A stretch of 64,000 bases of DNA from positions 741,666 to 805,665 of the forward strand of contig NW_018404790.1 in NCBI RefSeq assembly GCF_002113885.1, read 5' to 3'. Source of the stretch: Mizuhopecten yessoensis (taxonomy: Eukaryota). Each line of letters begins with the position of its first letter. Within the stretch, counting starts at the first letter, position 1. The notes below the pieces were generated by a model. The model saw only the letters and a program-made list of their open reading frames with translations. It had not been told where the DNA came from and did not search any database. Position numbers and translations under genes: made by a program. Shown one piece after another: positions 1,085 to 27,863 of the stretch.

Positions 1085-2206
1085 TCATTTCTTGAAATGT
1101 ATAAAGCATCCGCCACATGCCTCCGTACATGGTTGTATGCAACAGTTGATGATGAGGCTGTAGATCTTCTGGCAGAGTCCACAGTTGATCTCGAAGACCT
1201 TCATGCATGGGGTGATGAACCAGATATGGTAGAAAGCAATGTAGGCGAACTCACAGCCCCATTCCGCTGCAATACAGATACCACAGAAGAGGGTGAGGAT
1301 CTTGTAGCAGAGTCCCTTCCACAATTCGAAACAGGTGTAGGACAGCTTCCAGACGCAGTCGATACTGTGGGTACCATCGGGCTCACCCAGGACATCGTTA
1401 AACAGCAAAGTCTAAAAGGGAAGAGGGAACACATTTGTTTAAATCGGGGTCATATAAGGCTGCGTATTTAAAACAAAATATTACGAATGGACTTTCTTGA
1501 AAGACTTAGAATATTGACTGTCTGGTAACCTAGCAACAGTATCAAACACTGAGGCGAATCCAGACTTGTCTAGGGGAGGTGTGGGGAGGAGCGGAGGATG
1601 ATTGTGGAAAACTTCCGTCGTCCCCCCCCCCCCCCCCCCCCCCCCCCCCACGAAAAAAATAATTGACAAAAATATAATTAAATAATGAACACTGAGATGT
1701 GAGTTAAACAAAGTTACAAATAGTCTATGTCCACATCCCGCTGCTGAAGAGTTCACAGTGTTTGTCCGCCAATTAATTAAAACTTCACATAACTTTTTTT
1801 TTTTTTTTTTCTCACAAGAACAAAACTAAAAAATATTTAATTGACAAAACTATCGGAAGTGTGATATCGCCAACTGTTGTATGTCTCTGTAGTAAGGGGT
1901 TAAATCGCATTAATAAATCGCATTAATAAATCGGATTAAATCTCTGATCATACACATGAATTTAAAATTTGACATGTACAGAACGCTTTTAGAAGCATTA
2001 AGAAAATCGGATGTTTTAGCGAATCGACGAAATCAGTTTCTAAAGTAATAATCTGACACGCACACACAAACAACATTTTCTGTAAAAAGTTCTATTTTAA
2101 AATATATATTTCCATTAAATTAAAAATCAAATTGATTACTTACCCCTAAATGGCTGTTAAGGCTATTGGGATCCCTAGCAACTAAATCAACTTGGTCGTC
2201 AGACAT
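1085..2206 (-). CDS. CAV: Caveolin-like protein, copy A, 129 aa; complement(join(1085..1411,2144..2206))
   Basis: Exon 1 is ATG..GGG|gtaagt (MSDDQVDLVARDPNSLNSHLG). Acceptor is tttag|ACT. Exon 2 reads TLLFNDVLGEPDGTHSIDCVWKLSY...HIWFITPC...FKK-TGA. It matches caveolin motifs RDPxxLN, the FEDVIAEP-like signature, THSxDxxWK, and HIWxxxPC. The intron is phase 0 and in frame. Symbol is family level only. Confidence 0.95.
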
Positions 2207-4439
2207 GGTGTTAGATGGCGTCTATAGTAACGTCTGTAATGGATGAGCTCGTAAATCGGACTGATCCACAGTGGCCAGGGTCAGTTTTAATACCTAGTGT
2301 CTTCTGGTTGCGTAGGAACAAGCGCGAGACAATTTAGATCAATCAAATTTGGACTGACCACTTAGTTGCCGTAGTGGAACATTGGTATAGCATAAACAAA
2401 AGGGTCAACATTTAAATCAATTTACATTGCTTTAGGGCTGAACATTTGAAGGACATGGTCAATGTATGATATTGACCACTGCATTGCTTGTCTAAGGACT
2501 AGATTAAACAAACCACACTGTTGTGTAGTGTTGTTTGGAAACGGGGGCTAAATATAACGGTCTTCCATTCTCAAGTTAAACACTGTTTGTATGATATTGT
2601 GTGTTAAGTGATTTGGCATACATCTGTATCTTTGTAGACTTATTTAGTACTGGTTTATTTTTTTACGAAAATAGTCTTGTTATGACTGAAACATTGTTTT
2701 AGGGAAAATACGGTTTTCTTTTTTTGTCTTCTGCCTTTAACTTAAAGCCCTTGTACCCCTCCCTCCCCCTCTCTCGAATTTTAACCCCTCCGTCTTGTAT
2801 CTACCAGGTATATGCTGCACGTCTCCGACTGATATCTTGGCATAAACACCCCACTTTGACACTCTCAGCCACGGAAAGTTTTAATAAACTGGCAACTTAT
2901 GTCGGTCACATTTTATCTCGGTCAAACTTTGTCCACGATGGTTTCTAAACCGTCAACTTCACGAAGCATTTGTTTTAACATGTCGTTAAATTGTATATAC
3001 CGGTACAAGAACGCAAAACACATTCGAAATAGTTATAATAAGTAATTCTTACAGATATCATATATTTCATAGGTACTGTCATATCATAAAGATGTTCGCT
3101 GGGAAAATCATGTCGTATTATTACGCCAGTCTTAAAATGTTCTCCGATGAATATACCAGTATCATTATATAATCCCTTAATTTCTACAGTAATTATATAT
3201 ATATGTAATTCAATGATGTATCTATTTGTACAGCCTCCGAATTAACATACAGGAACCCGTCAAATTATTCCGGAGAATGTTTGTGTAGGATATGTACCAA
3301 ACTTGACCGTTTCTCCTTACAATGGTCAGATATAGATATTCCTCGTAACATAATCGATAATTTATTCAGGTATCACCCGTCTTACGTCATCAAACTAAAG
3401 AAGACATATGTGTTGAAAAGGAAATAATAATTCATTATATGTTGAGAAGCGCAATGGCTGGTCAAGAATCTGATCGTTTAAACTCCAACCACAGAAATTT
3501 AAGAAACTCTATAGCTGGATGTTTTGAGCTGTACAATCGCTATTGACGTTATAATCGGGACAATTTCCGATCGTCTTCATTAATAATTAATCTTCAGCTT
3601 CCATGGCAATGCTATGAACGGATTTTGATATTGCATACAAAGAAAACGTTATGATTTTTAAATTGCACTTCCCAAGTTAGAATAATTATCTTGTGGTTAC
3701 TGATTAGAAGGGGCGCGGAAGAGAAAAAGGAAAATATTATACTATCATCATTATCATAAAAATTACCATAAAATGATTGGGAGAAAAAGCGTCTGTCTTC
3801 ATGTGTCTTAACCGTGATTTATACAAATTGTAATATTATTTAAACATCAAAGTATTCGAACATGTAATTACTCATTTGTTGATGTCTGTATCAAGTAGAA
3901 ACGTATTTACCATTCTTTATGTTTTTCACTTTTCATTGTGAGTAATTATCACGTCATAGTAGCATTAGAGCGTAAGCCACGCCGCTTTAATACTATACTA
4001 GTTTAGGTGCTTGATTGTGTTATTGTTTGTTGTAGTAGAGGTAATATGTATTGTCCTGTCCACCTAATATTGTCAGGGCCACACTGTCAGAAATCAAGCC
4101 GGTACGGGTCCTCTCTTGTCACCGACATAAGGAGCTTACGAGTACCGAATTCTGCGGACGAGGATTAATTAACAGAAATAAGGACTTAAGCTAACTACAG
4201 TTTTACCGGCGTCTGATATTGAGTACAAAACGGAGAAAGATTTTTTTCTGTAAAAATTCAATACACTCGATATAATTATATACTTGGTAGACATTATTTA
4301 TCTAACATTCAATTTTACAAACAAAATTACAAACATAGTCAATGAGTCATTATGACGCTCGTATAAGTCAAACAAGATATACAGTGTATTAATATGTTAA
4401 AAGATGGCAGTACCAGCGTTACCTTGGATGTCAATACCA

Positions 4440-5480
4440 CACACGACATACAGGTGGATATTGTATACATACTGTATTATTGGAGGGTAACAGCACCAAG
4501 AGTCACCCTTACCGTGCTACTGTCGCTCACGACATGAATTAGATTCTATATTCAAAACATTATATGTGTTAGAGAGTGATAGTACCTAGAGTCAACCCGG
4601 CGATGTTACTGTCGCACATAACATACAGTTAAATATAATATAAATACTACAATTGTTAGAGGGTGATAGTAACTAGAGTCACCCCGGCGATGTTACTGTC
4701 GCACATAACATACAGTTAGATATAATATAAATACTACAATTGTTAGAGGGTGATAGTACCTAAGGTCATCCCGGGGATGCTAACATACTGTTAGATATGA
4801 TATAAATACTACATTTGTTAGAGGGCGATAGTAACTAGAGTCACCCCGGCGATGTTACTGTCGCACATAACATACAGTTAGATATGATATTTCACATAAC
4901 TTTGTTAGAGGGTGATAGTACCTAGGGGCACCCCGGCGATATTACTGTCGCACATAACATGCAGCTAGATATGATATAAATGCTACATTTGTTAGAGGGC
5001 GATAGTACCTAGAGTCCCCCCGGCGATGTTACTGTCGCACATAACATACAGTTAGATATAATATAAATACTACATTTGTTAGAGGGTGATAGTACCTAGG
5101 GTCACCCCAGCGATATTATTGTCACACATATCATAAAGTAAGATGTAATAGAAATACTACATTCATTAGAAGTGGACAGTGCATTGGGTCACCCCGTGGA
5201 TGTTGCTGTCACAAAGGAAATACATTTAGATATTGTTTAAATACTAGATATATTAGAGGTTGATATTACCAAGGGTCACCCGGGCAGGTCGAGGTCACAC
5301 AGAACATTCGTTATATATTAAATAAAAGCTACATTCTTCAAGGGTTAAAACACCTAGGGCAGCCCATTGATGATGCTGTCACAAAGGACAGGAATACATC
5401 AGAAGCCAATAGTGTCTAGGGTCAGCTGAGAGTGCCACGGCCATACAGTTAAATATTACATTAGTTGGAGGTTGACAGTA
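4440..5480. repeat. 87-bp minisatellite array (~11 copies, homogeneous centre, degenerate edges)
   Basis: gttagagggtgatagtacctagagtcaccccggcgatgttactgtcgcacataacatacagttagatat... recurs at 4655, 4742, 4817 (after a deleted unit), 4904, 4991 and 5078. Confidence 0.92.
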
Positions 5481-6039
5481 CCCAGTTTCCCCAACTTTTT
5501 CACAATCACTCGAAGTGATATCCGAGGGGTGAATCTAGGTACTTTCACCTTGTAATGGGTATAAAATGTATCATTGTATCATATCAAACGTTATGATAAA
5601 CAAAGGTTTGGAATGTGTATATATAATATTTATTGACATGAATTTCAACAAAATAACATTAGACATTGTAAAGATAATTTACATACTGGTGTAAAATACA
5701 ATGAATGCTGCTAACAATATGACTCGGTCACTCTGGAAAACCGTAAATATGGTGACTACAAACCAAACGAACGTTACACGCATCGACTTTGCGCAGTAAA
5801 CATTTTTTACGGTCACCCGTTACTAAGCCGTTGTCTAGCACACTTCCATTGATTCAAAGTTAAACAAAAGTTAAGGTCATGGTCAGGGAACATGTTTAAC
5901 TGAAACATTTACCTACAACATTTAATACAGTACTTAACATGCCATATTTTCATGTAGTGCTAATTTTACAACTTTCCGTCTTTTTGGTGTCAATGTATTG
6001 TATTTTTTAATTGCTGTTCGTCCTTGTTTAGGTCAGGAA

Positions 6040-9000
6040 TGGTTTCAATGTTGTGGTCAAGTAACCATGTATCCACTCCCAGGTATTGTCCTGTTAAATG
6101 GTCAGTTCTTTATAGGTGACCTACAATGGAATCTGTATACAAAGGTATATTGACGTTACATACTTGTCAATGTACAGATTGGTCGAACTTGTATTTGATT
6201 GTCCACTACCCTTTTTACTGCCTTCTCAAAGAGAGTCCAGCTAGTGATATTTACCTATCGGGTGGAGCGTGTAGAAAACCAATAGGAAATAGTTCATTGA
6301 TATCGTCAATTATTAATAGAAAAACGAAATAATGTAGTTTGTTTTAGACTTACCTCATTTTTACATAAATAGTGTATATCAAACAGTTTTATTAGCATTG
6401 TTTCTTTAATTCATTTAAGTTAACATTGATTGTTTTGAACTCATTTTATGATATTAAAAGAGACAACAATATACCAACTACTATACTGATAGTAAAACAC
6501 TGCCTCTCATTTTATCTTTATTATGAACAAACTGATTCGCCTATAGTTAAAATTCGTTTGCCATGCAATTGACAGATTGACAGAATTTTAGGCATTCGGA
6601 ATTTTAATGTTTGAAAAAAATAAAAAATGCAGGGGCGAACTCGGAAATTTAACATTACAAAGCCCACACTTTACCAATACTGCAAAACAAGAAAAATACA
6701 AGCAAAACACAAAAATGAGTGTCTAGTTTATGAACCACAAAGCATATAGAAATTAATAGGGGAAGTTACTATAAGGCCAACAAGTTACTCCTTTTAGTTG
6801 CTTCATCATCTACATAGAAGGGAGGATACTCTAAGTCGAAACAGTCTGATTGGAACTCTCCTTCGCGATTATAACTGATACAGCGGTACCCTTCACCTTA
6901 AATAAAACATCACTCATCTTACAGAGTTATTTTTAGTTCGATTTCCAATTTATAGTGCTTCCTAGATAGAATCAAGTCATCGTGAGAAATAAGTGTCTCG
7001 ATAGTATAACTGGGCCAATTCATCTCATTGTGGTATAAATATTTAACAGTCTCGATTGTCCAGCTAATCTCTTGTTGAACTAAGCTCATTTACAACTTAC
7101 GATTGTAGTATTTCCACAATACTTTAGTGTAAGTCCGATTCTCATTGCTTTCATACAAACATACCCACGTTTTGCTTTGTGAATGAAAACCATGTACGAA
7201 GAAGGTGTGTTTACTAGGTACTGAGGATATTATACTATCATGCTTATCTGTCTTTATTTGAGAGAAGGATATACGTGTATTTTGTTTACATGATTACTGA
7301 GAATGCTATTAATCTCACCCTCTGTAACCCAGTAGTGGTGAAGTTTGCTTTTCGTCTGGTCAGTTTTATTTGTGCCATAGTGTTGTGGCAACCTGGTCAG
7401 TGTTTATGGCGCTTTTCTTTATATATTACGTCCGAAGGCCTTTGCTTTTAACCCTTTCTTAACACATAACCGATTAATGAACATTCTTTAAAGGGCGAGT
7501 ACTAATACGAGGTATATGGTCATTGTAATGCCATATTTATGAGTGTTAGCACACCTTACGGTTTCTGAGTTCCATCGCAACCTAACCGAAATCAACAACT
7601 ATGACCCATGCTTGTTAACCATAATGGATAGGAATTTTAATTAAAAAGTTTCATTTTTGCTCTCACGTTAGAATCAGTACTGTCATATGAGAGCCCAATG
7701 TACTGTTTTTACTCCTGTTTCGGAGCCAGCATTGAGGCTTGGTAAGACTGATGTAATTAAAACCGGGGTTTATAACACGTTCGGAACGCATACTTTTGCT
7801 ATTGCGATTACGACTTTACTCATGTTCTGTATACAAGTGGCAGAAAGATGTGAAATTCTAGGAAAAAAAAGAAATTTCAAACGATGATAAGAATAATAAT
7901 TTATTTTCCAATCAACTCTTCCATGTGCGATCGCTGTCTTTTCTACAGCCACCTTTTCAACTGACCATAAATGTGTCCAAATCATTTTCTTTGTGAGTGG
8001 TTAGATGTGAATATTTTTTCTCATATTCGGTATTCGTTTCATTTGCGCACACATTCGATATTAAAGGAAGAATATCTCGGTACTTAATAATTATAGATAC
8101 ATATGTATATAACTACAGCCATTCAAATTGATCTATAAATAGCAATTTTAAGTATATGTTGTTGTTTTAGATATTTTTATTTTCCATGTTACATATTTCT
8201 TATTTGCAATTTTTTAAAGATATATATATTTCGATGTTTTCCCGACACCTGTAAATAGTGACGCAATGTCGAACAGCCGTTCCCTGTTCAATTACGCTTA
8301 CCTGGCTGTCAATGGATTGGTCAAGTAACATTCCACTGCCAGGTATTGTCCAGTTAAATGGTCAATTCTGTTAAAATGACCTACAATGGTATTTACAAAG
8401 GTGTATTGAATTTATATTCTTGCCAATGTATAGATTGGTCGTATATTGATTTGAAAGCTACCCTTGCGGTTCTGGATAGAATATTTACAAATCGGTTGGT
8501 GCGTGTTGAACTTAGTCAGAACATCTACACGTAACATTCACTATGCTACGCAATTGGTGACTTATTCATTCTCTTTGATGTAACCAATAATGTACTATAT
8601 ATACGTAAAATACCAAAACAATGAGTAAAAATACACCTCGTGCTTTGAAAGTACAACATTTGATAAAGCGCCCTATCTAGCTAACAAAAGCCACTCTAAA
8701 GCGCGTTACAGTACATAGATATACAATTAATACAATTAGCATATACCTCAATCAATACAATGCTTGAGGAATTTGCAGGAGCTGCCTTATCAGGCGCTTC
8801 CTACTAGTCCTATGTCACCTGGCTAATATCTCCCTATGTGTGTATGCCTGTGTATGTGTTGGAGATGTAATGTGTTCTGTTTGTAGTGGGACCGTGCTTC
8901 CAACGGCATCATTTATTGTGCCACCCCACTTGAATGCTACAGCACATCCACCCGGACCAATGTATACACCACCTGGGTTGTTGGAGTTGTGTGGGCAGGA

Positions 9001-10957: not shown

Positions 10958-11000
10958 CACACACACACACACCACCACCAACACACACACACACACACAC
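10958..11000. repeat. (CA)n microsatellite, interrupted
   Basis: cacacacacacac accaccacca acacacacacacacacacac. Confidence 0.9.
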
Positions 11001-12110: not shown

Positions 12111-13217
12111 ATGTCTGACGATCAAGTTGACTTAGTTGCCAGGGATCCCAATAGCCTGAACGCCCATTTGGGGGTAAGTTCTTTTTTATTTATAGGTAAT
12201 TGTAAGCATGGATTTTATCAAATTATGCAGTGTTTCTTTTTATAAATGTTATACGTCACATATATAGAGACACATTATTCAAATATATCTTTGTACTGTA
12301 GAATACACGTATTAAACCAAATAAACGTGAGTTTGAGAAATAATGAGATTTGTTTAATATCAGATTCTACCTTTGATTATTAATAATGGTAAATGAGACT
12401 TTTTTCAATAAAATTTAATATAGAAAGTGATTAACAGATATAAGTTGATTTCAATCGTCGATATCTTGATAAGGAGGGCATACAAATACTATCCTCGGGT
12501 ACACATTTAGTCGGAGTAAGAAAATCAGCAAACATTGGTTCCGACACTTACTACTAGTTTTCATTCATACCCAGTAACGTCGTTTCTTCGAGATAACATG
12601 TTCGTGATGGAGCCGCGATGTATATCATCCTCAATGTTAAGAAAATGCAATTCGATCACCTACTTTATAAGCTTCGCGACTTTATTTTTAATACATAAAC
12701 AATATCTTCTTTTGCGTTATGATGTGTTTGCCTGTTCTGTAGAAACTATACTGCATGCTGTTGCTAGGTAACAAGACAGTCAATATTCAAAGTCTTTCAA
12801 CAAAGTCCATTAGTAATATTTTGGTTTAAATACGCAGCCGTTTATGCCTTTATCCCGATTTTAACAAATGTGTTCCCTCTTCCGTTATAGACGTTGATGT
12901 TCAATGATGTTCTTGGTGAGCCCGATGGTACCCACAGTATCGACTGCGTCTGGAAGATGTCCTACACATGTTTCGAATTGTGGAAGGGACTCTGCTACAA
13001 GATCCTCACCCTCTTCTGTGGTATCTGTATTGCAGCGGAATGGGGCTGTGAGTTCGCCTACATTGCTTTCTATCATATCTGGTTCATCACCCCATGCATG
13101 AAGATATTCGAGATCAACTGTGGACTCTGCCAGAAGATCTACAGTATGGTGATCAACTGTTGCATACAACCATGTACGGAGGCTTGTGGTGGACTCTTCA
13201 TTCATTTTAAGAAATAG
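12111..13217 (+). CDS. CAV: Caveolin-like protein, copy B, 129 aa; join(12111..12173,12891..13217)
   Basis: acaaccATG start; MSDDQVDLVARDPNSLNAHLG|gtaagt ... ttatag|TLMFNDVLGEPDGTHSIDCVWK...FIHFKK-TAG; same exon sizes as the other copies. Confidence 0.95.
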
Positions 13218-16287: not shown

Positions 16288-17348
16288 AAGCAAGGCAAAG
16301 AATTGCAAGGCGATCCATAGTCTCCCACCGGTAATGATTTCTATATTTTACAAACAGTACTTTTATGTCAGGATGTAACCATTTTTAGGAAAGTATCCTC
16401 ATACATACTTCTTGCACTCTGCCATCCAAAGACGTCCTTGTACACAAAAACTGGTTACTCCAGGTGAAGTAGTATAGAAGATATGCCCCGGAAAATCATT
16501 TTCAAAAGTGAAAGTCATAGGTCACAGTGACCTTCTTCTTGCACACTGCACTCCGGCATCCCAATATGTCCTTGTACACAAAAGCTGGTTACTCCAGGTG
16601 AAGTCGTATAGAAGATATGCCCCGGAAAAACATTCTCAAAAGTGAAAGTAAAGGTCAAGTAATAGGTCACAGTGACCTAATTCTTGCACTATGCACTCCG
16701 CCAACCCAAAACGCCCTTGAACACCAAATCTGGTTACTCCATATGAAGTATTATAGAAGATATGTCCCGAACTAACTTTTTCAAAAGTTAAAGTCAAAGG
16801 TCAAAGCATATGTTACAGTGAGGTCATAGTGACCTTCTTCTTGCACTCTGCACTCCGCCATCCCAATATGTCCTTGTACACAAAAACTGGTTACTCCAGG
16901 TGAAGTCGTATAGAAGATATGCCCCGGAAAACCATTCTCAAAAGTGAAAGTAAAGGTCAAGTAATAGGTCACAGTGACCTAATTCTTGCACTATGCACTC
17001 CGCCAACCCAAAACGCCCTTGAACACCAAATCTGGTTACTCCATATGAAGTATTATATAAAATATGCCCCGATCTAACTTTTTCAAAAGTTAATGTCAAA
17101 GGTCAAAGCATATGTCACAGTGAGGTCATAGCGACCTTCTTCTTCCACTCCTCATTCCGTCTTCCCAAGATGTCCTTGTACACCAAATCTGGTTAATCCA
17201 TGTGAAATAGTATAAAAGATATGCCACGGACAAACTTTTTCGGAAGAAAAGTCTGAAGGACGGACGGACGGACGGACGGAGTGCAAACCCCTAATTCCCC
17301 CCCCCCCCCCCCCCCCATGGGACCTGGGAACCGATGGGGGACTAATAA
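16288..17348 (-). mobile_element. Helentron/HINE-like non-autonomous element with internal ~150-bp satellite arranged as a 302-bp dimer
   Basis: Minus strand reads ttattagtcccccatcggt...(GTCC)n microsatellite (17258-17280), then tandem repeats (e.g. ccttcttcttgcac at 16531 and 16833; acgcccttga at 16711 and 17013), ending ccggtgggagactat...cttgctt. This is the typical bivalve HINE layout. Confidence 0.8.
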
Positions 17349-17860: not shown

Positions 17861-18877
17861 ATGGCTGACGACCAGCTGGATCTGGTGTCCCGGGACCCGA
17901 ACGGAGTTAACGCCCATTTAGGGGTTGGTATCTTCACTTTTAATATTATTTCAGCAATATTCTTATATACTAAAAATATCTGATTTATTAATTATGTAAC
18001 CAATCATTCTTTTAGTTTTATACAGTTTCATTAGGAAAAGTTTTATCAAAAAAGACTATTACTTATTTTTATCGCTTTAGACATTAATTTTATTGATTTT
18101 GTCCACCATTCTATTGTTTTTGTAGTTTTAGTGTGTACTTGTTAGGTTTATTGGGATAAGCGTTCTTTTAACATAAAAATTAATTTATGATTTTCTTCTA
18201 TGTGTGTAATGGGTGTCTTCGGGGCGGTATGTTTGGATATTTACTTCCTTTACAAAGCGCGGATCTGATGCCGAAATTTGAGTGTTACCTCACTGAAACA
18301 CAGTTACGAAGGCGCCAAACACAGTATCCCGGTCACATTATACTAACAATGGGTTAGCCAAATGTTGCGCTTATCTGAGGTGTTTCGAGAAGGAAACGGG
18401 ACGAAAAAAAAGCAAAAAGAAACCCATACACACAGTTTGAGTGCAATATTTGCTGTAGAGTTATGTTTAAGTTTATAATCTTTAAAAGTAACGAATGGAA
18501 AAAGGAACCGTGCCAATGTTATCTGACCGTAAATTTTGTTTTATTTTAAGACACTTTTGTTTAACGATGTCCTTGGTGAGCCCGATGGTACCCACAGTAT
18601 CGACTGCGTCTGGAAGCTGTCCTACATGTGTTTCGAATGCTGGAAGGGTCTCTGCTACAAACTCCTCACCCTCTTCTGTGGTATCTGTATTGCAGCGGAA
18701 TGGGGCTGTGAGTTCGCCTACATAGCGTTCTATCATGTATGGTTTCTATCCCCATGCATGAAGATATTTGAAATCAACTGCGTACTTTGTCAAAAAATCT
18801 ACGCCACTGTCATTAACTGTTGTATGTTGCCATGTTTTGAGGCGCTAGGGGGATGTTTCATACACTTTAAAAGATGA
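17861..18877 (+). CDS. CAV: Caveolin-like protein, copy C (most divergent), 129 aa; join(17861..17923,18551..18877)
   Basis: MADDQLDLVSRDPNGVNAHLG|gttggt ... ttttaag|TLLFNDVLGEPDGTHSIDCVWK...FIHFKR-TGA; intact frame; donor is GT but weaker than in the other copies. Confidence 0.92.
18240..18400 (-). mobile_element. SINE fragment (Meta-domain-like) in intron of caveolin copy C
   Basis: Reverse complement tagtataatgtgaccggg...ttcagtgaggtaacactc resembles the conserved central domain of molluscan tRNA-SINEs; a related degenerate piece lies at ~8780-8970. Confidence 0.5.
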
Positions 18878-18894
18878 TCGATTTGTATACCAAC

Positions 18895-18895
<1 letters not shown>

Positions 18896-18926
<31 letters not shown>
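18896..18926 (+). repeat. (GAT)10 microsatellite in 3' UTR of caveolin copy C
   Basis: tgatgatgat... begins about 20 nt after the stop codon. Confidence 0.9.
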
Positions 18927-18928
<2 letters not shown>

Positions 18929-19401
18929 TTCACTTCTGGTTCAAATACAACCTTTTTTCAATGTATAATTTATAATAACTTGTTCTACAGTTTACTTTAA
19001 TAATATTGAAACTATTATGTCACATTAATGTATACCATATCAGTTACCATTAAATTAGCACTTTTCTCTATGAAATGTCTTTGTGTATTGTAACAGAGTT
19101 ATCAATTATCAATCGGGAACCGTCGGCAGGAGGATTTTCTCGTTTACGAAAAGTGCCGACGGTTCCCGATTCCGAATTATCTTTCTATCACCATTTTGTA
19201 TATTTGACCTTGTGACACACTGTTACCGAGCTTAGAATCTCTCGCGGGCGTATCCCTAGTGAGTGTGCGCTCGATTTACTCTCCCGGAGAATCGGGTCAG
19301 ACATAATACCAATCGAGTATTTTAGGATACTAAAACACTGAACTGTTTTAGAACAATGAACTACCTATATAATTGTGTCCACGGAAAAGGAGTAAACAAG
19401 T

Positions 19402-20709
19402 GAAATCATGTGTAAAGCATAATGGGGGTTATTCTGACTATTTCACAAATACGATTGGTCTTTTTCAGGGTGAAATATTATCACCGATTTTGTACACCAT
19501 GTACGTGAACGATTGTGAAATACATTTTATCAAGGAAGGATGTCCTTCAATTGAACTTAATTTGATTAATATTTTTCTGTTGATGTACGCTGACGATATG
19601 GTTTTATTTGCAGAAACACCAGAAAAACTACAGGAAGTTATGGATGCTCTGAAAGTATATAATAACAAGTATAAGCTTACATTAAATACAGAAAAGACGA
19701 AAATAGTAGTTTTCAGGAATGGTGGCATAATACGGAATAACGAAAAGTGGATATATGATAACATAGAGCTGCAAGTTGTTAATCAGTTCAATTACTTAGG
19801 AATGCTTTTCAATTATAATGGTAAATTTAATGTTACACAAAAANNNNNNNNNNNNNNNNNNNNNNNNNNNNNNNNNNNNNNNNNNNNNNNNNNNNNNNNN
19901 NNNNNNNNNNNNNNNNNNNNNNNNNNNNNNNNNNNNNNNNNNNNNNNNNNNNNNNNNNNNNNNNNNNNNNNNNNNNNNNNNNNNNNNNNNNNNNNNNNNN
20001 NNNNNNNNNNNNNNNNNNNNNNNNNNNNNNNNNNNNNNNNNNNNNNNNNNNNNNNNNNNNNNNNNNNNNNNNNNNNNNNNNNNNNNNNNNNNNNNNNNNN
20101 NNNNNNNNNNNNNNNNNNNNNNNNNNNNNNNNNNNNNNNNNNNNNNNNNNNNNNNNNNNNNNNNNNNNNNNNTATTTGAGAAAACCTATCAATAATTTAT
20201 ACAAAAAATACTTAACACGTTTTAGATTAAGCTCACATAGTTTAAATATTGAGCAAGGCAGGTACAGAAATCAACCAAGAGAACAACGACTTTGTACATT
20301 CTGTAACGCTAATGATGTTGAAGATGAATTCCATTTTATACTTAAATGCAAATTTTATGAGGATTTTAGGCATGAATATATTAAACCTTATTTTTACAAA
20401 CGACCATGTGTTTTCAAGTTAATAAAACTGTTCAATACCAAAATCGTTAAAGATCTAAATAACCTAGGCAAATTTTTGCATTTAAGTACAAAACGACGAA
20501 ATAATATTGTTTAACTAAATATAATACTGCATGTTCTGTATGTTATACCCACATACAGGTATATTGTGTTTTAATAATCTATGTTATGCATTGTACACTA
20601 TTGCACCAACTGTAATTTGTGTTATACATTGTGATATCTTGTACATAAGTATGTCTACTCACCGATGTGTTGTAAACATAAGGAAATAAAGAATCTGAAT
20701 CTGAATCTG
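19402..20709 (+). mobile_element. 5'-truncated non-LTR retrotransposon (RTE-X-like LINE), RT and C-terminal CCHC region
   Basis: RT motifs GLFQGEILSPILY and LMYADD, plus FNYLG. After the N gap: RLSSHSLNIEQGRY...RLCTFC...EDEFHFILKC. Ends with AATAAA and a (GAATCT)n tail. Candidate 8-bp TSD aaacaagt at 19394-19401 and 20710-20717. Confidence 0.9.
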
Positions 20710-21519
20710 AAACAAGTCTTTATTTAATATACCACTTATATTAGTAAATAAATCGATATGTAAATCATTGATCGATTTGACACGTGTGCATACAGATGTG
20801 CACAACTTTTACCGTCGTCAGATAGTTATAAGGAAGTTTGATGTGATAAACGGTTAGATTTTAAGGTGCTCTCACAGCAGTCTGACGGTAGCATGGTTCT
20901 TTGTGAACGGTTACATTTAAGATATCTCCGGACACTTCTTTCCCGTGAATATATTTCCAAACAAGATCACATGATAATGTCACCATAATAATGGCAATTT
21001 TATTTGTTCATGGTTTCTATTAGCTTTTACAATCTTAAAATTCATATTGAAAAAAAAAAATCAGACTCTATTTTTTTTGTCGCATAACATGCTTACGTAA
21101 CTGCAAATATTCAAAACACTCGATAAACGGAAAAGGTCAAAGGTTCATGCATGATTAGTAAATGTCGCGGCAAGGTTAAACTGAGAACCCTTGGATTAGA
21201 ATATTGAACCCTCTTTTGCCGCGTAAAGAAACCATGTATCACTGGTAAGCTCGCAGGCCGTCCAGGATATCAAAGTGATCAAAACACAATGAGATTTTTA
21301 AATAAAATCATGCTGTGCGAATGTTTCGCTCAACAAAATAGAAACGCACAGCTTAATTTGTAGAACTATATTTCATAACTATAAGAAGTAAAATATAAAC
21401 CGTAGTGATTTCTTCAAATTGATGCAAGTGTGAACGGGGTAACTGAATTTACTTACACACCACGTCATTTAAATTCCGAACTTTTTTCTTTCATTTATAC
21501 ATTTTATACGGTAATATAT

Positions 21520-22142
21520 GTTATTATATGACTGGTGCTAATTCCCAGCCCTGATTGGAGGAGCGACGTCATGTAACGAGCCTGTAAATATGTTACAGAC
21601 CTCGTTCTATAAATAGGCCTGGGAAATTTCCCAGACATCGATTAACAGCCAATTGCAAACGAATCACCTGTTACAGACCTCGTTCTATGAATAGAAAAGT
21701 GTTACAGACCTCGACACATACATAGAAAAGTGTAACAGACCGCTACTAAAAATAGGCGTAGGTAATTTCCCAGCCAGTCTGTAATTCTGTTACCAATCAC
21801 ACTACTGAATTCAACTACAAATGAATTATCTCATCAAATTCTGAACATCTATTTTGAGTCTGAAATTTAAAAAAATTGTGTATGTTATTTTGTATTTGAG
21901 GTCCTTCACTCTGTGATTCCAAAATGGTCCATGCTATCCATGTGTTTATGACTTGAAAAAAATATTAATCTCATTGTAAAATATCATATAATGAAACAAT
22001 TGTTGACTTCAGTTTCGGTCTATCCCTGATTTACGGACCTGGTCTGAACAATATTCACCTCGGCCTTCGGCCTCTGTGAATATTGTTCAGACCAGGTTCG
22101 TAAATCAGGGATAGACCTCACCTGAGGTCCATACTTGTATAA
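21520..22142 (+). mobile_element. Non-autonomous element (Crypton-like) with internal short repeats and a terminal ~125-bp hairpin
   Basis: Hairpin at 22005-22129 (ggtctatccctgatttacggacctggtctgaacaatattcac-ctcggccttcggcctct-gtgaatattgttcagaccaggttcgtaaatcagggatagacc); repeated tgttacagacctcg units; second copy at 28530-29092. Confidence 0.7.
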
Positions 22143-23352
22143 CGTAACATCGCAACGTCATTTCGGGGATCTAGGAACTCTTTCATGTGAAAATTTGCTC
22201 ATGACTAAATCATTCGGCTTGAGCGACCTTGTTGAGAAAAACAATGAAGAAACAGTGGTTTAATTTTCGAATGAGCTATAACGTAGGCGACTCTACTTAG
22301 AGGATTTTTCGACAGTGAAATGTGAATTCGAGTGATAATGATTCGGCAACATGAAAATATAGGCAGGCGTTGACACCCGCCTAAGGATAATATTTTTAAG
22401 GATATGAAGTCTAAAAATGTCCAAGTTTTGACTTAGCCAATCACAAATAACGTCAAAAAACGTGACGACATGCGTGATTGACTAAGCAAAGTTTATGACG
22501 GAGATCTGCATTAGCTAGACCCGTCACGTTTTTTTTTATTTCATGGGTCATTAACGATTAAAAAATATGAAAGGATTTTCATTAACATGTAATGGGAGGA
22601 GCATTGTGTGTCATAATTACAACCCGAAGGACAGGGACCTATTGAAAAATGGGGATTTGGAAAAAACCCAGCGGTTCATGATGATATTAAGCGTTGTTTC
22701 AGAGAACTTGTAAGAAAACAAACAATCAAACTTTGAATTGCATGCATACAGAAATTACGGGGGGGTTATCCTAAGTTATTTGTTCACGACAGTTTTACAA
22801 CTATATTTACATAAAGCGAAATAAGATAATATTATATGAACTTTAAAATACTGATTTCTAATATTGAAATATAGATACGTAAAGGAAAATTTGGATGGAA
22901 TTTTTTTTTATAGAGCGGCAATCATTTTTTGGTTCGAAATTCATTAATGAGTGTCCTTATAAGTTGTTCGACCTGTCACCTTTCTGGTCGTTAGTGTTGG
23001 GTATACACTGACCAGTGTCCACTCTGTTAATGGACTTGTCACCAGTGGTACACGGAAGCGTGCAGCAGGGAAGTAAAACAATCTGGCCCCGGTTATCTGC
23101 CCTTGACTGCTGGCCCCGGATGCTTAGAAGGTGGTTAGATATAACCCGTTATTTGTTAGGTAACATTTTCAAAAGTGAACACAATAAAACTTAAGAACGT
23201 GTGATATCATTTCACTGCTATAGACTTGTTGAGACAAATAAGATTGACGTGTTTTATTTTCCTTTGAAAGACCTTGTTTTCTTACTGGCAACAGTTTGAA
23301 TTTTTCACTTACCAGTTAAAGTAGTGTATTTCCATTTGCTCTGCATTGCCAT

Positions 23353-23542
23353 TATTCCGTCTTTGCGTATTGCAGAGTTATCTTCTCTTGGAAGCAGGTA
23401 TTGATTGTTACGTCATTGGTTTTTGCGAGAAAATTACGTCGTTTTCTCAAAAATTGATGACGTTACTCTCACAAACAAGTGACGTAACAAACAATACCTG
23501 CTCCTAAGAGAAGATAACTCTGCGGTACGCAAAGACGGAATA
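23353..23542. mobile_element. Palindromic MITE (~190 bp)
   Basis: tattccgtctttgcgta..gcagagttatcttctctt ... aagagaagataactctgc..tacgcaaagacggaata; complementary over nearly its whole length. Confidence 0.85.
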
Positions 23543-23909
23543 TAACCTTACCAAACAAAATTGAAAGATATCATATCATAATTCTCACATATTTCCCATT
23601 GGTGTCGTGATATGAAGAACATTTTCGTGACGTCGTGGTAACCCATCCGTGCTACCGGATTGAAAAACCCAATTTATCAATGTAACTCGCAACAATTTAT
23701 GTAGTTATGCTGTATAAAAAGGTGAATATCCTCACGGTGGAATATATTGATTAAATTGTTAAAATTAAATTGATGATTTTGTGTTTATTACCACGAACTG
23801 TATTGTTTTTGCCGGGAACGGTCGCGTGTACCCGTGACGTCACAAGAACATGTTCCATTGACAGATAGCGCGAAATTTGACTTTGAAATACGATTACGGG
23901 TTGGAAATA

Positions 23910-24045
23910 TAAGTATTAAACTGCCTTCTTTGGAAAGTTATTGTTCTAAAATTCTGACAGGATTGCAGACAAATTAATCATAACGCGCGTTATTCAATTT
24001 GTCTGCAATAACAATAACTTTCCAAAATGGGCAGTTTAATGCTTA
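23910..24045. mobile_element. Imperfect palindrome, end of a Crypton-like/MITE element
   Basis: taagtattaaactgcc..tttggaaagttattgtt ... aacaataactttccaaa..ggcagtttaatgctta. Confidence 0.65.
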
Positions 24046-24169
24046 AATAACAAAAATTATGGTTCTAACAAAAATACTTTATGGAGTCGGCGCCATGTTT
24101 TCTTGGTCTCTTGATAAAAAATGCATTACAACCCGTTCTATTTCAGCGCATTAAATACAATTTAACATG

Positions 24170-24760
24170 TACGTAAAATGTTGTGCATCGAGGTGTTTGT
24201 TTTTATTCTGACTCTTTATTACGGAGTTATGACCCTTTGTTGAAAAATCATTGTCCAGACAACTCCTCAAAAACCACTGGGACAATTTCAACGTAAGTTT
24301 CAGATATGATACAATCCCCCGATGTTGTGCATTCAGGTATTATTTTTTTATTCTGACCCTTTTTATGGAATCATGATCTTTGCTGAAAAATCCTTGTCAG
24401 TTTAACTTCTCCTAAACTTCTGTGCCGATTTCAACGAAAGTTAGCAGATATGGGATCAACTCCCTGACGTTTTGCATCTAGGTGTATTTTTTCATTCCAA
24501 ACCCTTTTTAATGGAGTTATGGCCCTTTGTTGAAAAATCCTTTTCGTGTCTTTGCAGATATGATAATTACCCCCTGTCATCATGTAGTTGTGTACTTCCT
24601 ATTTATTATTTCAATTGTTTCATCTCCATTTAGGAACTCTTTTAGGGGGAACAATTTTTCCGTATTTCATTTTTTTGATATGGCGGCTTATGTATCTGTG
24701 TATTGGATGGTGGAACACACAAAGTAGGTCAATGTGACCTGTTGTTTACTCTTTTTACCT
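24170..24760 (+). repeat. Degenerate ~145-bp tandem repeats (HINE internal satellite remnant)
   Basis: ggagttatg(a/g)ccctttgttgaaaaatc at ~24223, ~24367 and ~24513. Confidence 0.65.
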
Positions 24761-25299
24761 CAGCCTCTCAAAAGTTTGTTTGGGTCATATCTTTTACTAG
24801 TTCACCTGGACTTACCAGATTTGGTAAGCAAATATGTTTTGACACGGGGAGTAAAATAAGTATATACAAAAATAGGTGTTCAGCTCAGTAAATAAACAAA
24901 TGATTAATGGTTGGGATAACATTTTGCCTTTGACTTACAGCTCTAGTTAGAACAGTATTACCCTGGCAACTGGTTACAAGCGTACCCCGAACTAGATTTG
25001 TTAAATGAAAGAAGAGGCAGAAACTCTTGTGTTATGTGACTATTTTTTTATTTACACATATCTCTCTGACATGACTTTGTGTACAATTGTCTGCGTTTGG
25101 CACTTTGGTTCAATAGCTGGAGACGTGTCATATCGGCTTCAAAACTTATGACGTCATGACATTGCGCATGCGTGCACAATCTTTTTACGTCGGTCATAAA
25201 TAGTCCGTGTAAATTCGTGTGTTGTTTTTCATTTCCATTATAAACATATTGATACGGTACTGAAAATGTTCACCGTCTCCGCCTGTTTGATGATGTTTC

Positions 25300-27863
25300 T
25301 TAATTCTTGAAATGTATAAAGCATCCGCCACAAGCCTCCGTCAATGGCTGTACGCAGCAATTGATCATCATGGCGTAGATCTTCTGGCAGAGTCCACAGT
25401 TGATCTCGAAGACCTTCATGCATGGGGTGATGAACCAGATATGGTAGAAAGCAATGTAGGCGAACTCACAGCCCCATTCCGCTGCAATACAGATACCACA
25501 GAAGAGGGTGAGGAGTTTGTAGCAGAGTCCCTTCCACAATTCGAAACATGTGTAGGACAGCTTCCAGACGCAGTCGATACTGTGGGTACCATCGGGCTCA
25601 CCCAGGACATCGTTAAACAGCAAAGTCTAAAAACAAAATGAAGACTATTTACCATATTACCATTAATACCATCATAATCAACCGGTAAATTCCCCCTCCT
25701 TTCACCCTTTCCCTCACTACTTCCCATTCCCCTTGCTGTTTTCATGTCAAACAGTAAATTGTCTATGAATGCATGCTGAACATTTTTGTCATCACGTGTT
25801 ATATCTTAAGTGTAACTGTGTGTTGCATTTTCGGAAGAGGGCCTAGTAAGTTGTCAGAACTTGTACCCAATCCGGTAAAAATGGGGGTTGGGGTGATAAC
25901 AATCCTTAGCGTTGTCCGATAAAACGAAATTACAAAGCAGTTTCAGTAACGAATAATATTAAGGTGTACCATATTTAAATTAATTTCCGTTTCAATAGAT
26001 ATTTCAATAGATGTTTAAATAGGAGCACGGTAATATTTAAGTATTTATATCAGTATAATCATTGTTTAAATGTTTTATTTTATCTTTTTTTCTCTGTGTC
26101 GTTTCCCTAGGGGAATTTTAAACGAGTTAAATCCGATTATCAAGATATCAGTTCAATTTGTATTACTTTGAGTCCTACGGTGCATAAGTACATTGTAAGT
26201 CGTCAGCTCGCGCCACCGTTCTTACCTTTAGGTATTTTTAAACTGAGTACGGGTGGAAAGTGGCCATTTTACACTCTTTTGTAATAAATTAAAACAGTGA
26301 CATGTACAACTTATTTATGGGCTATTCTAAGATATCTAGTAAGAATGGACCATGGTTTATTTATTTTTTGTTTGTTTAATATTTATTTACTCATTCATTT
26401 ATTTTTTATTTTTGTTTATTTATTTATGTATTTATTGATTGCTCTCGGTGGACAGCAATCGTATTAATTTATGCGAGTGGTTACCCGTAGTATTATTTTT
26501 GGTGTAAAATTTTCTTATTTCAGAAAGAAAATTCCATGTGTATAATCTCCGTATATCAGTAAAATAAGGGCACTTAAAAATGAAATCAAGTAGGTAATCT
26601 ATATCCCCATTAACAAAAGAATTCATTTTATATTTCGATCATTCTATATAATATATTTGACGATATTTTAATTTTGGTATTAATTATAACCTAATTTATG
26701 TAGAAAAATATATAGGTTTGTTCAGCACATTACCTTTGTAGTTCCCCTGTTTGTGGAATGTTATACTTTTTTTTATCTCTAATATTGTTAAAAATGTCAT
26801 AGTTATCCATGGTATTATTTTTGGTGTAAAATTTCCTTATTTCAGAAAGAAAATTTCGTGTGTATAATCTCCGTATATCAGTTAAAATAAGGGCACTTAA
26901 AAATTAAATTAAGAAGGTAATTGATCTATATCTTTAATATTGTTAAAGATGTCAGATATCGTCAGCATGATTGTGATAGAATGATCATCATTAGTTTTCT
27001 GGACTTGCCATATACTGAGCGAATTCGGATCAATCCACAGATAATTTTACACACCCCACTCTTTACCATTTACCCCAGTTTCATTTAACTGAGAATTTCT
27101 AAAGCAGAGTGTTCAGTTTTAACCAATATCTGATAACAGATCAATGTACTCGTTATTTGAAGCGGTAAGATTCCCAATTCCCGTGCATCTTCCCTTCTCG
27201 TCCCCACAAATGTCTTCAGTCACTTACCTCAGTTCAATTTGATTTCGATATTGGTTAGTTCGATATTTTTGTCGAAGATTTGTTTTATGTTTTTCATTAT
27301 TTAAACTTAAATACGACATTAGCATTTTTTCGTGTTTTTACTATAATCCTATAAGCTAAGTTTATTTCTTATTCTGGTCTCGCAGAAAGCTTTCTGCAAT
27401 GGACTCATGAATACACGAAAAATAAGTATAATAATACGTTTTCTATCCCGTATACAATTATGCTTGATTTTTTTTCTTCTTAATATTTGGTGCTTTTGCC
27501 GCTCTGTGATTTGAGCAAAATTCTTAATTTTACAGTTAGTATCTAGTTGAGTTTTAGGACAATTTTTATGCTATGTACTAAAATAACATTTCACGACAAA
27601 TTACTGCTTCTGATCTTATTGGGGGGAAAACATGAATACATTTATCCGAAATTCATCACAGACCGAGTCCTGTTTTTTACTGGCTAAAATTTACTATTTA
27701 TTACAATAATAATACTAAACGTACAGAACTTCAAAAGAGGAAATAAACATTTAGGTATTATTTAAAATTAAACAAATCATAGAGTAATAAAATAACTTAC
27801 CCCCAAATGGGCGTTAAGGCCGTTGGGATCCCTGGCTACTAAATCAACTTGGTCGTCCGACAT
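25300..27863 (-). CDS. CAV: Caveolin-like protein, copy D, 129 aa; complement(join(25300..25626,27801..27863))
   Basis: MSDDQVDLVARDPNGLNAHLG|gtaagt ... ttttag|TLLFNDVLGEPDGTHSIDCVWK...FIHFKN-TAA; same structure with a longer (about 2.2 kb) intron. Confidence 0.95.
26432..26925 (-). mobile_element. Decayed LINE 3' remnant with local ~110-bp duplication, in intron of caveolin copy D
   Basis: FIFKCPYFTDIRRLY...KLIRLLSTE resembles the C-terminus of the LINE at 20176-20514; 26490-26600 is repeated at 26812-26920. Confidence 0.55.

What the first reader, a model, noticed from the sequence alone, without database searches (positions are those of the whole stretch)
1085..27863. Cluster of four intact, minimal, cysteine-rich caveolin paralogs in a -,+,+,- arrangement
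Seen: four complete two-exon genes with identical exon lengths (63+327 bp, 129 aa) and canonical GT-AG splice sites, with no stops or frameshifts, within 27 kb. A/B are head-to-head and C/D tail-to-tail. The N-terminus is only 10 residues before RDP. Known: vertebrates have three caveolins, and cavins, needed for classical caveolae, are vertebrate-specific. Inference: a lineage-specific, dosage-amplified caveolin subfamily with unusual chemistry, possibly forming hetero-oligomeric discs with a non-caveolar function. This is the best candidate for an undescribed system in the window.
Basis: partly seen in the sequence, partly recalled or inferred. Interest (0 to 1): 0.78.

Follow-up and report, generated by a model that had tools for sequence, protein, structure and literature searches.

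The report
Scallop cluster of four short caveolin genes
Four intact, already annotated caveolin genes of the Yesso scallop sit here in a cluster that other scallops share; they belong to an uncharacterised, mollusc-wide, cysteine-rich "core-only" branch of a known membrane-protein family, so they are real and mildly interesting, not a new system.

Summary
Four two-exon genes (63+327 bp, 129 aa, GT..AG, order -,+,+,-) lie at 1085-27863. Each is a strong Pfam Caveolin match with 13-14 cysteines. The N gap (19844-20172) lies between genes C and D inside a reverse-transcriptase remnant and touches no caveolin exon.

The genes are not undescribed. Their products are identical to four Mizuhopecten yessoensis RefSeq/GenBank proteins named caveolin-1-like. 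The same -,+,+,- cluster exists in Ylistrum balloti, and its B-C-D part in Argopecten irradians.

- **Selection:** the copies are under purifying selection (dN/dS 0.08-0.24).
- **Concerted evolution:** exon 2 is homogenised within species while introns and flanks are unalignable, which points to exon-limited gene conversion.
- **Family size:** the genome holds at least 30 caveolin exon-2 matches in two large arrays.
- **Age:** the A-D type is an old molluscan orthogroup (oysters, mussels, clams, gastropods).
- **Shared traits:** high cysteine content (9 positions at least 82% Cys), a Pro110-to-Cys change, a missing N-terminal tail and a truncated C-terminal beta-strand are clade-wide, not scallop-specific.

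Most likely they form caveolin-type membrane-embedded oligomeric discs. That step is inferred; expression, oligomer state and cysteine chemistry remain untested.

The scan held one related note on this same window (s1-517227).

The parts
2144..2206 (-). Gene A exon 1 (21 codons, Met to Gly; carries the pin-motif-like D-L-V-A-R-D-P-N-S-L-N)
   Evidence: prefix of P0103 = XP_021347651.1; aligns to human CAV1 48-64
1085..1411 (-). Gene A exon 2 (108 codons + stop; 14 Cys)
   Evidence: suffix of P0103
12111..12173 (+). Gene B exon 1
   Evidence: prefix of P0100 = XP_021347606.1
12891..13217 (+). Gene B exon 2 (13 Cys)
17861..17923 (+). Gene C exon 1 (donor GTTGGT, weaker consensus)
   Evidence: prefix of P0110 = XP_021347608.1
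18551..18877 (+). Gene C exon 2 (14 Cys); the most diverged copy, with positional orthologs in Argopecten and Ylistrum
27801..27863 (-). Gene D exon 1
   Evidence: prefix of P0104 = XP_021347652.1
25300..25626 (-). Gene D exon 2 (13 Cys)
1412..1542 (-). Last ~131 bp of the gene A intron: the only non-coding stretch shared between copies (87% identical to the end of the gene B intron). Read as a gene-conversion tract running into exon 2.
12755..12890 (+). Matching last ~136 bp of the gene B intron

Best explanation
The locus holds four functional paralogs of a molluscan caveolin subfamily in the Yesso scallop (Mizuhopecten yessoensis).

Shown here:
- Each protein is essentially the bare caveolin domain and aligns without gaps to human caveolin-1 residues 48-169.
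- That span covers the pin motif, hook/signature motif, scaffolding domain and spoke region.
- Each carries 13-14 cysteines, and Cys replaces the human Pro110.
- The four-gene cluster, with the same order and orientation, is shared by other scallop genera.
- The coding sequence is under purifying selection.
- Exon 2 is kept nearly identical among copies within a species while introns and flanks are unrelated. The best reading is concerted evolution by gene conversion limited to the homologous exons.
- The subfamily has orthologs in oysters, mussels, clams and gastropods with the same cysteine pattern.

Inferred, not shown:
- Like human, sea-urchin and choanoflagellate caveolins, the proteins assemble into spiral, amphipathic, multi-protomer discs embedded in the cytoplasmic membrane leaflet.
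- These discs probably have a reduced central beta-barrel or none.
- The cysteines probably serve as small hydrophobic packing or membrane-contact residues, and some as S-acylation sites.
- Because cavins were not detected, any membrane remodelling would be cavin-independent.
For: - **Gene models:** define the exons and splice sites.
- **Family:** Pfam Caveolin scores E 4.6e-39 to 5.8e-37 over residues 4-127 of 129.
- **Closest structure:** there is an ungapped alignment to 7SC0 human caveolin-1 residues 48-169, E 3.2e-29. The match to the sea-urchin chain 9DN0 is only E 2.4e-4.
- **Fold:** 7sc0 is the only Foldseek hit of the AF2 model, which has pLDDT 76.
- **Identity to annotated proteins:** the models are identical to RefSeq proteins XP_021347651.1, XP_021347606.1, XP_021347608.1 and XP_021347652.1.
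- **Conserved cluster:** the same arrangement occurs in Ylistrum (A, B, C, D positions) and in Argopecten (B, C, D).
- **Selection:** dN/dS is 0.08-0.24. dS is 0.17-0.37 among A, B and D and about 1.1-1.3 against C.
- **Identity step at exon borders:** identity falls from 93-99% in exon 2 nt 1-220 to background level at the exon borders.
- **Grouping by species:** the exon-2 nucleotide tree groups copies by species (Myes A/B/D 97/93; all four Ylistrum copies 99.6/98) despite conserved positions.
- **Clade-wide cysteines:** positions 40, 48, 56, 64, 67, 74, 98, 111 and 112 are Cys in at least 82% of 45 molluscan sequences. Nearly all 98 hits have 10-14% Cys.
- **Old orthogroup:** the A-D type forms an orthogroup with bivalve and gastropod members, separate from the other scallop paralogs, with 96/99 support.
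- **Truncated tail:** most other paralogs in this genome end in a tail like F-S-N-I-T-I-N-K-K, whereas A-D stop at F-K-K.
- **Published basis for the disc model:** Porta et al. 2022 (PMC9094659) and Han et al. 2025 (PMC12330381).
Against: - **No expression evidence:** no expression data could be reached. The short Logan/ENA contigs carrying relatives proved to be genomic exon-2 fragments with intron read-through, not cDNA.
- **Oligomerisation not shown:** the A+C complex job gave no verdict. The AF2 monomer is one long helix with pTM 0.33.
- **Cysteines are not on one face:**
  - The four Cys in the first helix are spaced exactly 8 residues apart.
  - On an ideal alpha-helix that spacing does not put them on one face.
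  - In the helical-moment test, Cys behave like bulky hydrophobic residues (mean offset 76 degrees) rather than lining a single face.
  - So 'all cysteines are membrane-facing acylation sites' is not supported.
- **Acylation sites only partly kept:** of the three acylated human cysteines, only Cys133 has a Cys at the same column (49% of the clade).
- **Conservation argues for more than acylation:** near-invariance (98-100%) of several Cys suggests a stricter structural or chemical role.
- **Cavin absence is weak:** that search was a six-frame exon-wise scan whose controls could not ring.
Confidence: 0.8

Rival explanations
1. The copies are assembly duplicates or collapsed/expanded haplotypes rather than four real genes.
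For: The assembly is fragmented (82,659 contigs) and has gaps in the window. Exon 2 of A and D is 98-99% identical over its first 220 nt.
Against: Introns differ in length (732, 717, 627 and 2174 bp). Introns and 600-bp flanks do not align, apart from about 136 bp between A and B. The same four positions and orientations occur in an independent assembly of Ylistrum, and three of them in Argopecten.
Confidence: 0.01
2. A, B and D arose by independent recent duplications in each scallop lineage, not by gene conversion among old copies.
For: Protein and nucleotide trees group A/B/D by species. dS among A, B and D is low at 0.17-0.37.
Against: - Order, orientation and approximate spacing are the same in Mizuhopecten and Ylistrum. 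This includes the head-to-head A/B pair about 9-10 kb apart and a neighbouring canonical-type caveolin convergent to A.
- Copy C groups across species in Mizuhopecten and Argopecten.
- Introns and flanks of A, B and D are unalignable. That is not expected at dS 0.17 if whole genes had duplicated recently.
Confidence: 0.08
3. The conserved cysteine array is a metal- or redox-active site rather than a packing or acylation feature. It includes two C-x-x-C pairs, a C-C pair and a C-x-x-x-C-x-x-C run near the C terminus, which would converge at the disc centre. On this reading the proteins act as membrane-bound thiol or metal buffers or sensors in metal-accumulating molluscs.
For: Several Cys are conserved at 98-100% across bivalves and gastropods, higher than is usual for acylation sites (my knowledge). 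A conserved E-x-x-C-E stretch lies in the former intramembrane domain. The beta-strand that forms the hub in human caveolin-1 is missing exactly where Cys are densest.
Against: No Pfam family other than Caveolin was found. Cys occupy columns that are hydrophobic in human caveolin-1 (F99, F107, I117, I141, I144, V155, L159, V163, I166). Cys behave like hydrophobic residues in the helical-moment test. This fits burial in lipid or protein, not solvent-exposed chelation. No experiment is available.
Confidence: 0.1
4. Most copies are transcriptionally silent or decaying duplicates, with only one working gene.
For: No expression data were available here. Copy C has a weaker donor site, GTTGGT. Two related copies elsewhere on the scaffold carry in-frame stops.
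Against: All four are intact with dN/dS 0.08-0.24. Intact copies sit at the same positions in two other genera. All four are RefSeq models.
Confidence: 0.05

Closest known systems
Human caveolin-1 (PDB 7SC0, 8S complex; Type II-CAV of Han et al. 2025)
   Same: There is an ungapped alignment of residues 5-126 to human 48-169, at 41% identity in the Foldseek alignment and E 3.2e-29. It covers the pin motif R-D-P-x-x-L-N, a signature motif variant F-N-D-V-L-G-E-P, the scaffolding domain, the former intramembrane domain and the spoke region. Pro132 and Cys133 equivalents are kept.
   Different: - Human residues 1-43, including the Tyr14 region, have no counterpart.
- The protein ends at the equivalent of human residue 172, so the 170-176 beta-strand that builds the central barrel is cut to about 3 residues.
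- There are 13-14 Cys instead of 3.
- Pro110 is Cys.
- Glutamates sit at the equivalents of I114 and Y118.
- Cys143 and Cys156 are not at the same columns, although Cys flank them.
Other caveolin paralogs of the same scallop genome (arrays on C76743:270-356 kb and C1463:657-738 kb)
   Same: They share the Pfam family and mostly the same exon-2 structure, and most are also Cys-rich with 11-17 Cys in exon 2.
   Different: They are only 38-58% identical to A-D and fall in a different major clade. Most keep a longer tail like F-S-N-I-T-I-N-K-K, the beta-strand equivalent. Two canonical-looking copies (L001, L002) have 7 Cys and keep the I-P of human 109-110.
Amphimedon queenslandica atypical caveolin (Han et al. 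2025, PMC12330381)
   Same: It is a caveolin predicted to lack the C-terminal beta-strand and barrel. The paper reports less regular complexes for it.
   Different: It belongs to a different clade (atypical, no pin motif). The scallop proteins have a pin motif and are far closer to human caveolin-1.
Annotated orthologs: caveolin-1-like / caveolin-3-like proteins of Argopecten, Pecten, Ylistrum, Crassostrea, Mytilus, Mya, Dreissena, Gigantopelta, Patella
   Same: They have the same length class (about 125-135 aa), the same Cys pattern and the same C-terminal F-x-x-F-K-K end. Identity to A exon 2 is 61-90%.
   Different: None of substance; these are the same orthogroup. I found no functional study of any member in the held literature.

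Membership tests
Caveolin (Pfam PF01146) | Profile match above the curated gathering score (25 bits) | tested here: met
   127-134 bits over residues 4-127 of 129 for all four proteins; 108-115 bits for exon 2 alone
Caveolin (Pfam PF01146) | Signature motif (human F-E-D-V-I-A-E-P, residues 68-75) | tested here: met
   F-N-D-V-L-G-E-P at residues 25-32, aligned column for column with human 68-75; F25, D27, V28, E31 and P32 are at least 90% conserved in 45 molluscan sequences
Type II-CAV (Han et al. 2025) | [quoted passage not shown] | tested here: met
   Residues 6-17 align to human 49-60 with R-D-P and L-N identical; R11, D12 and P13 are invariant in the clade. The match is much stronger to human caveolin-1 (105 bits) than to the 159-residue sea-urchin Type I chain 9DN0 (24.5 bits)
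Type II-CAV (Han et al. 2025) | C-terminal beta-strand forming the central parallel barrel (human 170-176) | tested here: not met
   The proteins end at the equivalent of human residue 172. Only F-K-K follows the last aligned column, whereas other paralogs in the same genome keep a 7-13 residue tail. Whether a short barrel still forms cannot be told from sequence
Caveolin (functional definition) | Assembly into a multi-protomer amphipathic disc in membranes | not testable with these tools
   Only monomer folding was available; the two-chain complex job returned no verdict
Caveolin (functional definition) | S-acylated cysteines on the membrane-facing surface (human Cys133, 143, 156) | tested here: inconclusive
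   The Cys133 column is Cys in A-D (49% of the clade). The 143 and 156 columns are Leu and Ile, with Cys at 141/144 and 154/155 instead. The helical-moment analysis does not place all Cys on one face. Acylation itself is not testable here
Classical caveolae system (caveolin + cavin coat) | Presence of cavin (PF15237) genes in the same genome | tested here: not met
   No match in the 988-Mb genome. This is a weak negative because the scan is exon-wise in six frames and the controls could not ring

The most novel reading that the evidence does not exclude
Molluscs maintain a distinct 'core-only' class of caveolin that builds barrel-less discs. A near-invariant ladder of cysteines (four of them spaced exactly eight residues apart in the rim helix, plus a dense C-terminal cluster converging on the disc centre) would replace the beta-barrel hub. 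The ladder would do this through dense S-acylation, inter-protomer thiol contacts or bound metal, giving a cavin-independent membrane scaffold with chemistry not seen in any characterised caveolin. The scallop four-gene cluster, kept uniform by gene conversion, would supply high dosage of it.
Probability: 0.15. Interest if true: 0.6.

Novelty: new member of a known kind. Interest (0 to 1): 0.33.

Why it matters
Caveolin structure-function work rests on a few vertebrate proteins plus one sea-urchin and one choanoflagellate structure. This molluscan orthogroup is a natural minimal caveolin: pin motif to spoke region and almost nothing else, with the barrel strand cut off, Pro110 replaced and about 11% cysteine. 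It therefore gives a ready-made test of two questions.

- Is the central barrel needed for disc assembly and membrane bending?
- What do conserved cysteines do in a monotopic disc?

The scale of the family in this scallop (at least 30 copies against three in vertebrates) does not appear in the literature I could search. Nor does the clear signature of exon-limited gene conversion in a cluster conserved across scallop genera. Both are of interest for bivalve gene-family evolution. None of this changes the classification: these are annotated caveolin genes.

Tried and rejected
- **Complex prediction:** a two-chain job with A (P0103) and C (P0110) scored 0.00 and gave no verdict, so it counts neither for nor against binding.
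- **Expression evidence from short contigs:**
  - I looked at short public contigs that carry complete relatives (P0004 on Logan/ENA contigs of 1.1-1.3 kb).
  - Their N-termini are translated intron ending in the acceptor.
  - They are therefore genomic exon-2 fragments, not cDNA.
- **Earlier scan notes:** searching them for 'caveolin' found nothing. The place search gave one note on this same window.
- **Literature:** searches on caveolin with scallop, yessoensis, bivalve/expansion/tandem, oyster and mollusc/paralogs found no study of this subfamily or of the expansion.
- **Cysteine facing:** a helical hydrophobic-moment analysis meant to place all Cys on the membrane face was inconclusive, with 7 of 14 in the hydrophobic hemisphere.
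- **Fold search:** the AF2 monomer returned only 7sc0 at TM 0.31, because the monomer is modelled as one straight helix.
- **Cavin search:** the result was negative but weak.
- **Rejected readings:** assembly duplication and pseudogenes; see the rival explanations.
  - Exons were searched by reference. For whole proteins I used the database entries P0100, P0103, P0104 and P0110, which match exon 1 as prefix and exon 2 as suffix.
  - For dN/dS the codons of the two exons were counted in one tally inside a script.
  - The N gaps were not filled or looked up.
  - Nothing in the window looked human.

Full report
**1.

ORF listing and direct reading show four exon-2 frames with caveolin-like translations at 1085-1411 (-), 12891-13217 (+), 18551-18877 (+) and 25300-25626 (-). 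A tblastn of the exon-1 peptide of copy A against the window located the three other first exons.

The checked models are:

| Gene | Strand | Exon 1 | Exon 2 | Intron |
|---|---|---|---|---|
| A | - | 2144-2206 | 1085-1411 | 732 bp |
| B | + | 12111-12173 | 12891-13217 | 717 bp |
| C | + | 17861-17923 | 18551-18877 | 627 bp |
| D | - | 27801-27863 | 25300-25626 | 2174 bp |

- Each exon 1 is 63 bp and ends in phase 0.
- Each exon 2 is 327 bp with the stop, so every product is 129 aa.
- Donors are GTAAGT in A, B and D and GTTGGT in C. All acceptors are AG behind a pyrimidine tract.
- Ten residues precede R-D-P.
- All 13-14 cysteines lie in exon 2.
- Pfam Caveolin is matched at E about 1e-32 by exon 2 alone and about 1e-38 by the whole proteins, over residues 4-127 of 129.

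**2. The assembly gap**

The N run 19844-20172 lies in the C-D spacer, 967 bp beyond the stop of C. The ORF that appears to run through it is a reverse-transcriptase fragment (RVT_1, E 3e-18), so a retroelement remnant is interrupted by the gap. No caveolin exon borders the gap.

In Ylistrum and Argopecten the C and D exon-2 segments are 3.1-3.4 kb apart with nothing between them, against 6.4 kb here. This fits a retroelement insertion rather than a hidden gene.

**3. Whose genes these are**

The window is G000:C1463:741666-805665 of a 987.6-Mb, 82,659-contig genome. The word search with exon 2 of A returned 98 Pfam-Caveolin proteins. All of the named ones are molluscan.

The 90%-identity cluster of the best hit holds fifteen proteins:

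| Species | Proteins in the cluster |
|---|---|
| Mizuhopecten yessoensis | 4 |
| Argopecten irradians | 4 |
| Ylistrum balloti | 4 |
| Pecten maximus | 3 |

A script showed that each window model equals one database protein, with exon 1 as prefix, exon 2 as suffix and the same length:

| Gene | Session id | Accession(s) |
|---|---|---|
| A | P0103 | XP_021347651.1 / OWF53214.1 |
| B | P0100 | XP_021347606.1 / OWF53215.1 |
| C | P0110 | XP_021347608.1 |
| D | P0104 | XP_021347652.1 / OWF53217.1 |

A second GenBank model for copy C, OWF53216.1, has 119 aa and differs from my model. So the genes are already annotated as caveolin-1-like.

I sent no self-made spliced sequence to any search or fold. 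Whole-protein work used these database entries.

**4. The cluster is conserved in scallops and evolves in concert**

- **Ylistrum:** contig look-ups show the order (-)(+)(+)(-), with a 7-Cys canonical-type caveolin convergent to the A-position gene. The same holds here, where L001 lies 4 kb left of the window.
- **Argopecten:** the B, C and D positions are present.
- **Selection within the window:** dN/dS is 0.08-0.24. dS is 0.17 (A-D), 0.33-0.37 (A-B, B-D) and 1.1-1.3 against C.
- **Non-coding sequence:** introns and 600-bp flanks give no blastn match, except the last ~136 bp of the A and B introns at 87%.
- **Segment-wise identity:** it falls from 93-99% in the first 220 nt of exon 2 among A, B and D to background level directly outside the exon.
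- **Exon-2 nucleotide tree:** it groups Mizuhopecten A/B/D (97/93) and all four Ylistrum copies (99.6/98) by species. Mizuhopecten C pairs with Argopecten C (98.6/79). The protein tree agrees as far as it is resolved.

Conserved positions, species-wise clustering and unrelated introns together are the signature of gene conversion confined to the homologous exons. Independent duplication in each lineage is the weaker alternative.

**5. The family is far larger than four**

A six-frame Pfam scan of the whole genome gave 30 matches over the curated cut-off.

- Eleven lie on the window's scaffold between 657 and 767 kb. They include the four here, the canonical-type neighbour L001 and two copies with in-frame stops.
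- Sixteen lie on C76743 between 270 and 356 kb, all on one strand.
- Single copies lie on three other contigs.
- Nearly all have 11-17 Cys in exon 2.

A tree of these copies with molluscan proteins splits them into two well-supported clades (96/99).

- A-D fall with proteins of oysters, mussels, pearl oysters, clams, unionids, a protobranch and two gastropods.
- Most other scallop paralogs fall in the other clade.

So the A-D type is an old molluscan orthogroup that was amplified to four copies in scallops.

**6. What the proteins look like against known structures**

P0103 aligns without a gap to human caveolin-1 (7SC0) residues 48-169 over its residues 5-126, E 3.2e-29. The sea-urchin chain 9DN0 scores only E 2.4e-4. 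The numbering is therefore scallop position + 43 = human position.

The domain limits come from Porta et al. 2022 (PMC9094659) and the revised scheme of Han et al. 2025 (PMC12330381). Against them, the scallop proteins compare as follows.

*Present*
- The pin motif, said there to be restricted to Type II caveolins.
- The hook with the signature motif.
- The scaffolding domain.
- The whole spoke region.

*Missing*
- The N-terminal variable region: human 1-43 has no counterpart.
- All but three residues of the 170-176 beta-strand that forms the central barrel.

Most other paralogs in this genome keep a tail resembling the human F-S-N-V-R-I-N-L-Q-K. The truncation is therefore a trait of this orthogroup; the clade consensus also ends F-x-x-F-K-K.

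*Other differences from human caveolin-1*
- Pro110 is Cys (87% of 45 molluscan sequences).
- I114 and Y118 are Glu.
- Of the three acylated human cysteines, only the Cys133 column is Cys here.

*Structure prediction*
- The AF2 monomer (pLDDT 76, pTM 0.33) is one long helix, residues 37-126.
- Foldseek finds only 7sc0.

**7. The cysteines**

- **Shared across the clade:** high Cys content is not special to these four. Nearly all 98 relatives have 10-14% Cys.
- **Conserved positions:** nine positions (40, 48, 56, 64, 67, 74, 98, 111, 112) are Cys in 82-100% of 45 sequences from bivalves and gastropods.
- **Human counterparts:** these columns are uncharged and mostly hydrophobic in human caveolin-1: G83, T91, F99, F107, P110, I117, C133, I141, I144, T154, V155, L159, V163 and I166.
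- **Helical-moment test:** Cys behave like bulky hydrophobic residues (mean offset 76 degrees for both) and unlike charged residues (123 degrees). Only 7 of 14 lie in the hydrophobic hemisphere.
- **Spacing:** the exact spacing of 8 in the first helix does not keep one face on an ideal helix.

I conclude that the cysteines line non-polar surfaces, facing lipid or neighbouring protomers. I cannot say how many are acylated.

**8. Mechanism, with its status**

- **Shown:** family membership, domain content, selection, conserved synteny and exon homogenisation.
- **Inferred from established caveolin structures** (three cryo-EM 11-mers):
  - assembly into an amphipathic spiral disc embedded in the cytoplasmic leaflet;
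  - a reduced barrel or none;
  - action without cavins (no PF15237 match, a weak negative).
- **Untested:**
  - Hetero-oligomers of A-D are plausible at 83-95% identity.
  - The one complex job gave no verdict.
  - No expression evidence could be obtained, because the short public contigs with relatives are genomic, not cDNA.

**9. Literature**

- I found no paper on this subfamily, on the cysteine pattern or on the bivalve expansion.
- Han et al. 2025 used molluscan genomes in a linkage-group analysis and list two Pecten maximus caveolins.
- An oyster single-cell study lists one caveolin as a specific marker of a haemocyte cluster (PMC12064177). This shows cell-type-specific use of at least one molluscan paralog, which one being unknown.

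**10. Verdict**

This is a real and correctly described gene cluster, but it is an annotated member of a known family, conserved across scallops and part of a much larger expansion. The features worth follow-up are the core-only architecture without the barrel strand, the near-invariant cysteine ladder, the family size and the clean case of exon-limited concerted evolution. Interest is modest (0.33). The classification is a new member of a known kind.

Noticed in passing
window 19373-20514 (N gap 19844-20172 inside): A reverse-transcriptase (RVT_1, E 3e-18) ORF fragment is interrupted by the assembly gap, and a 112-aa ORF with no Pfam match follows it. This looks like a retroelement remnant inserted in the C-D spacer, which is 6.4 kb here against 3.1-3.4 kb between the C and D exon-2 segments in Ylistrum and Argopecten.
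   Followed up: partly
L001 = G000:C1463:735835-739215 (about 4 kb left of the window): A canonical-looking caveolin exon lies convergent to gene A. It has 7 Cys, keeps the I-P of human 109-110 and keeps a beta-strand-like tail G-I-T-I-T-M-K-K-E. A similar 7-Cys exon lies convergent to the A-position gene in Ylistrum (L031).
   Followed up: partly
G000:C76743:270874-355800 (L003, L006-L009, L012-L018, L023, L024, L030): A second array holds 16 caveolin exon-2 matches, all on one strand within 85 kb. The copies at 297k and 301k have identical exon-2 translations, and several matches contain a stop. Together with the window's scaffold this gives at least 30 caveolin matches in the genome.
   Followed up: partly
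L025, L026 = G000:C1463:666-667k and 657k: Two caveolin copies of the short-tail type carry in-frame stops and a shared 8-residue deletion. They are probably pseudogenes at the far end of the same scaffold cluster.
   Followed up: no
L027 (G000:C875:577657-577983) and L029 (G000:C5557:722416-722739): Two long-branch caveolin copies group with the A-D clade but have long open C-terminal extensions of more than 30 residues. The placement may be a long-branch artefact.
   Followed up: no
window 56203-58136; 43286-44830; 58912-59653; 47845-48669; 16512-17241; 4567-5285: Several satellite arrays are present. One is a 35/103-bp G-rich array of about 55 units that causes the GC 0.48 and strong GC-skew peak at 56-58 kb. 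Another is a 35-bp array of 44 units with strong AT skew at 43-45 kb. There is also a 31-bp array of 24 units, plus 156-, 145/302- and 87-bp arrays. The long ORFs listed at 43-45 kb and 57-58 kb lie within these repeats.
   Followed up: partly
window about 1617-1652 (- strand), inside the intron of gene A: A homopolymer run of about 35 G sits in the intron. It may be a sequencing or assembly weak point.
   Followed up: no
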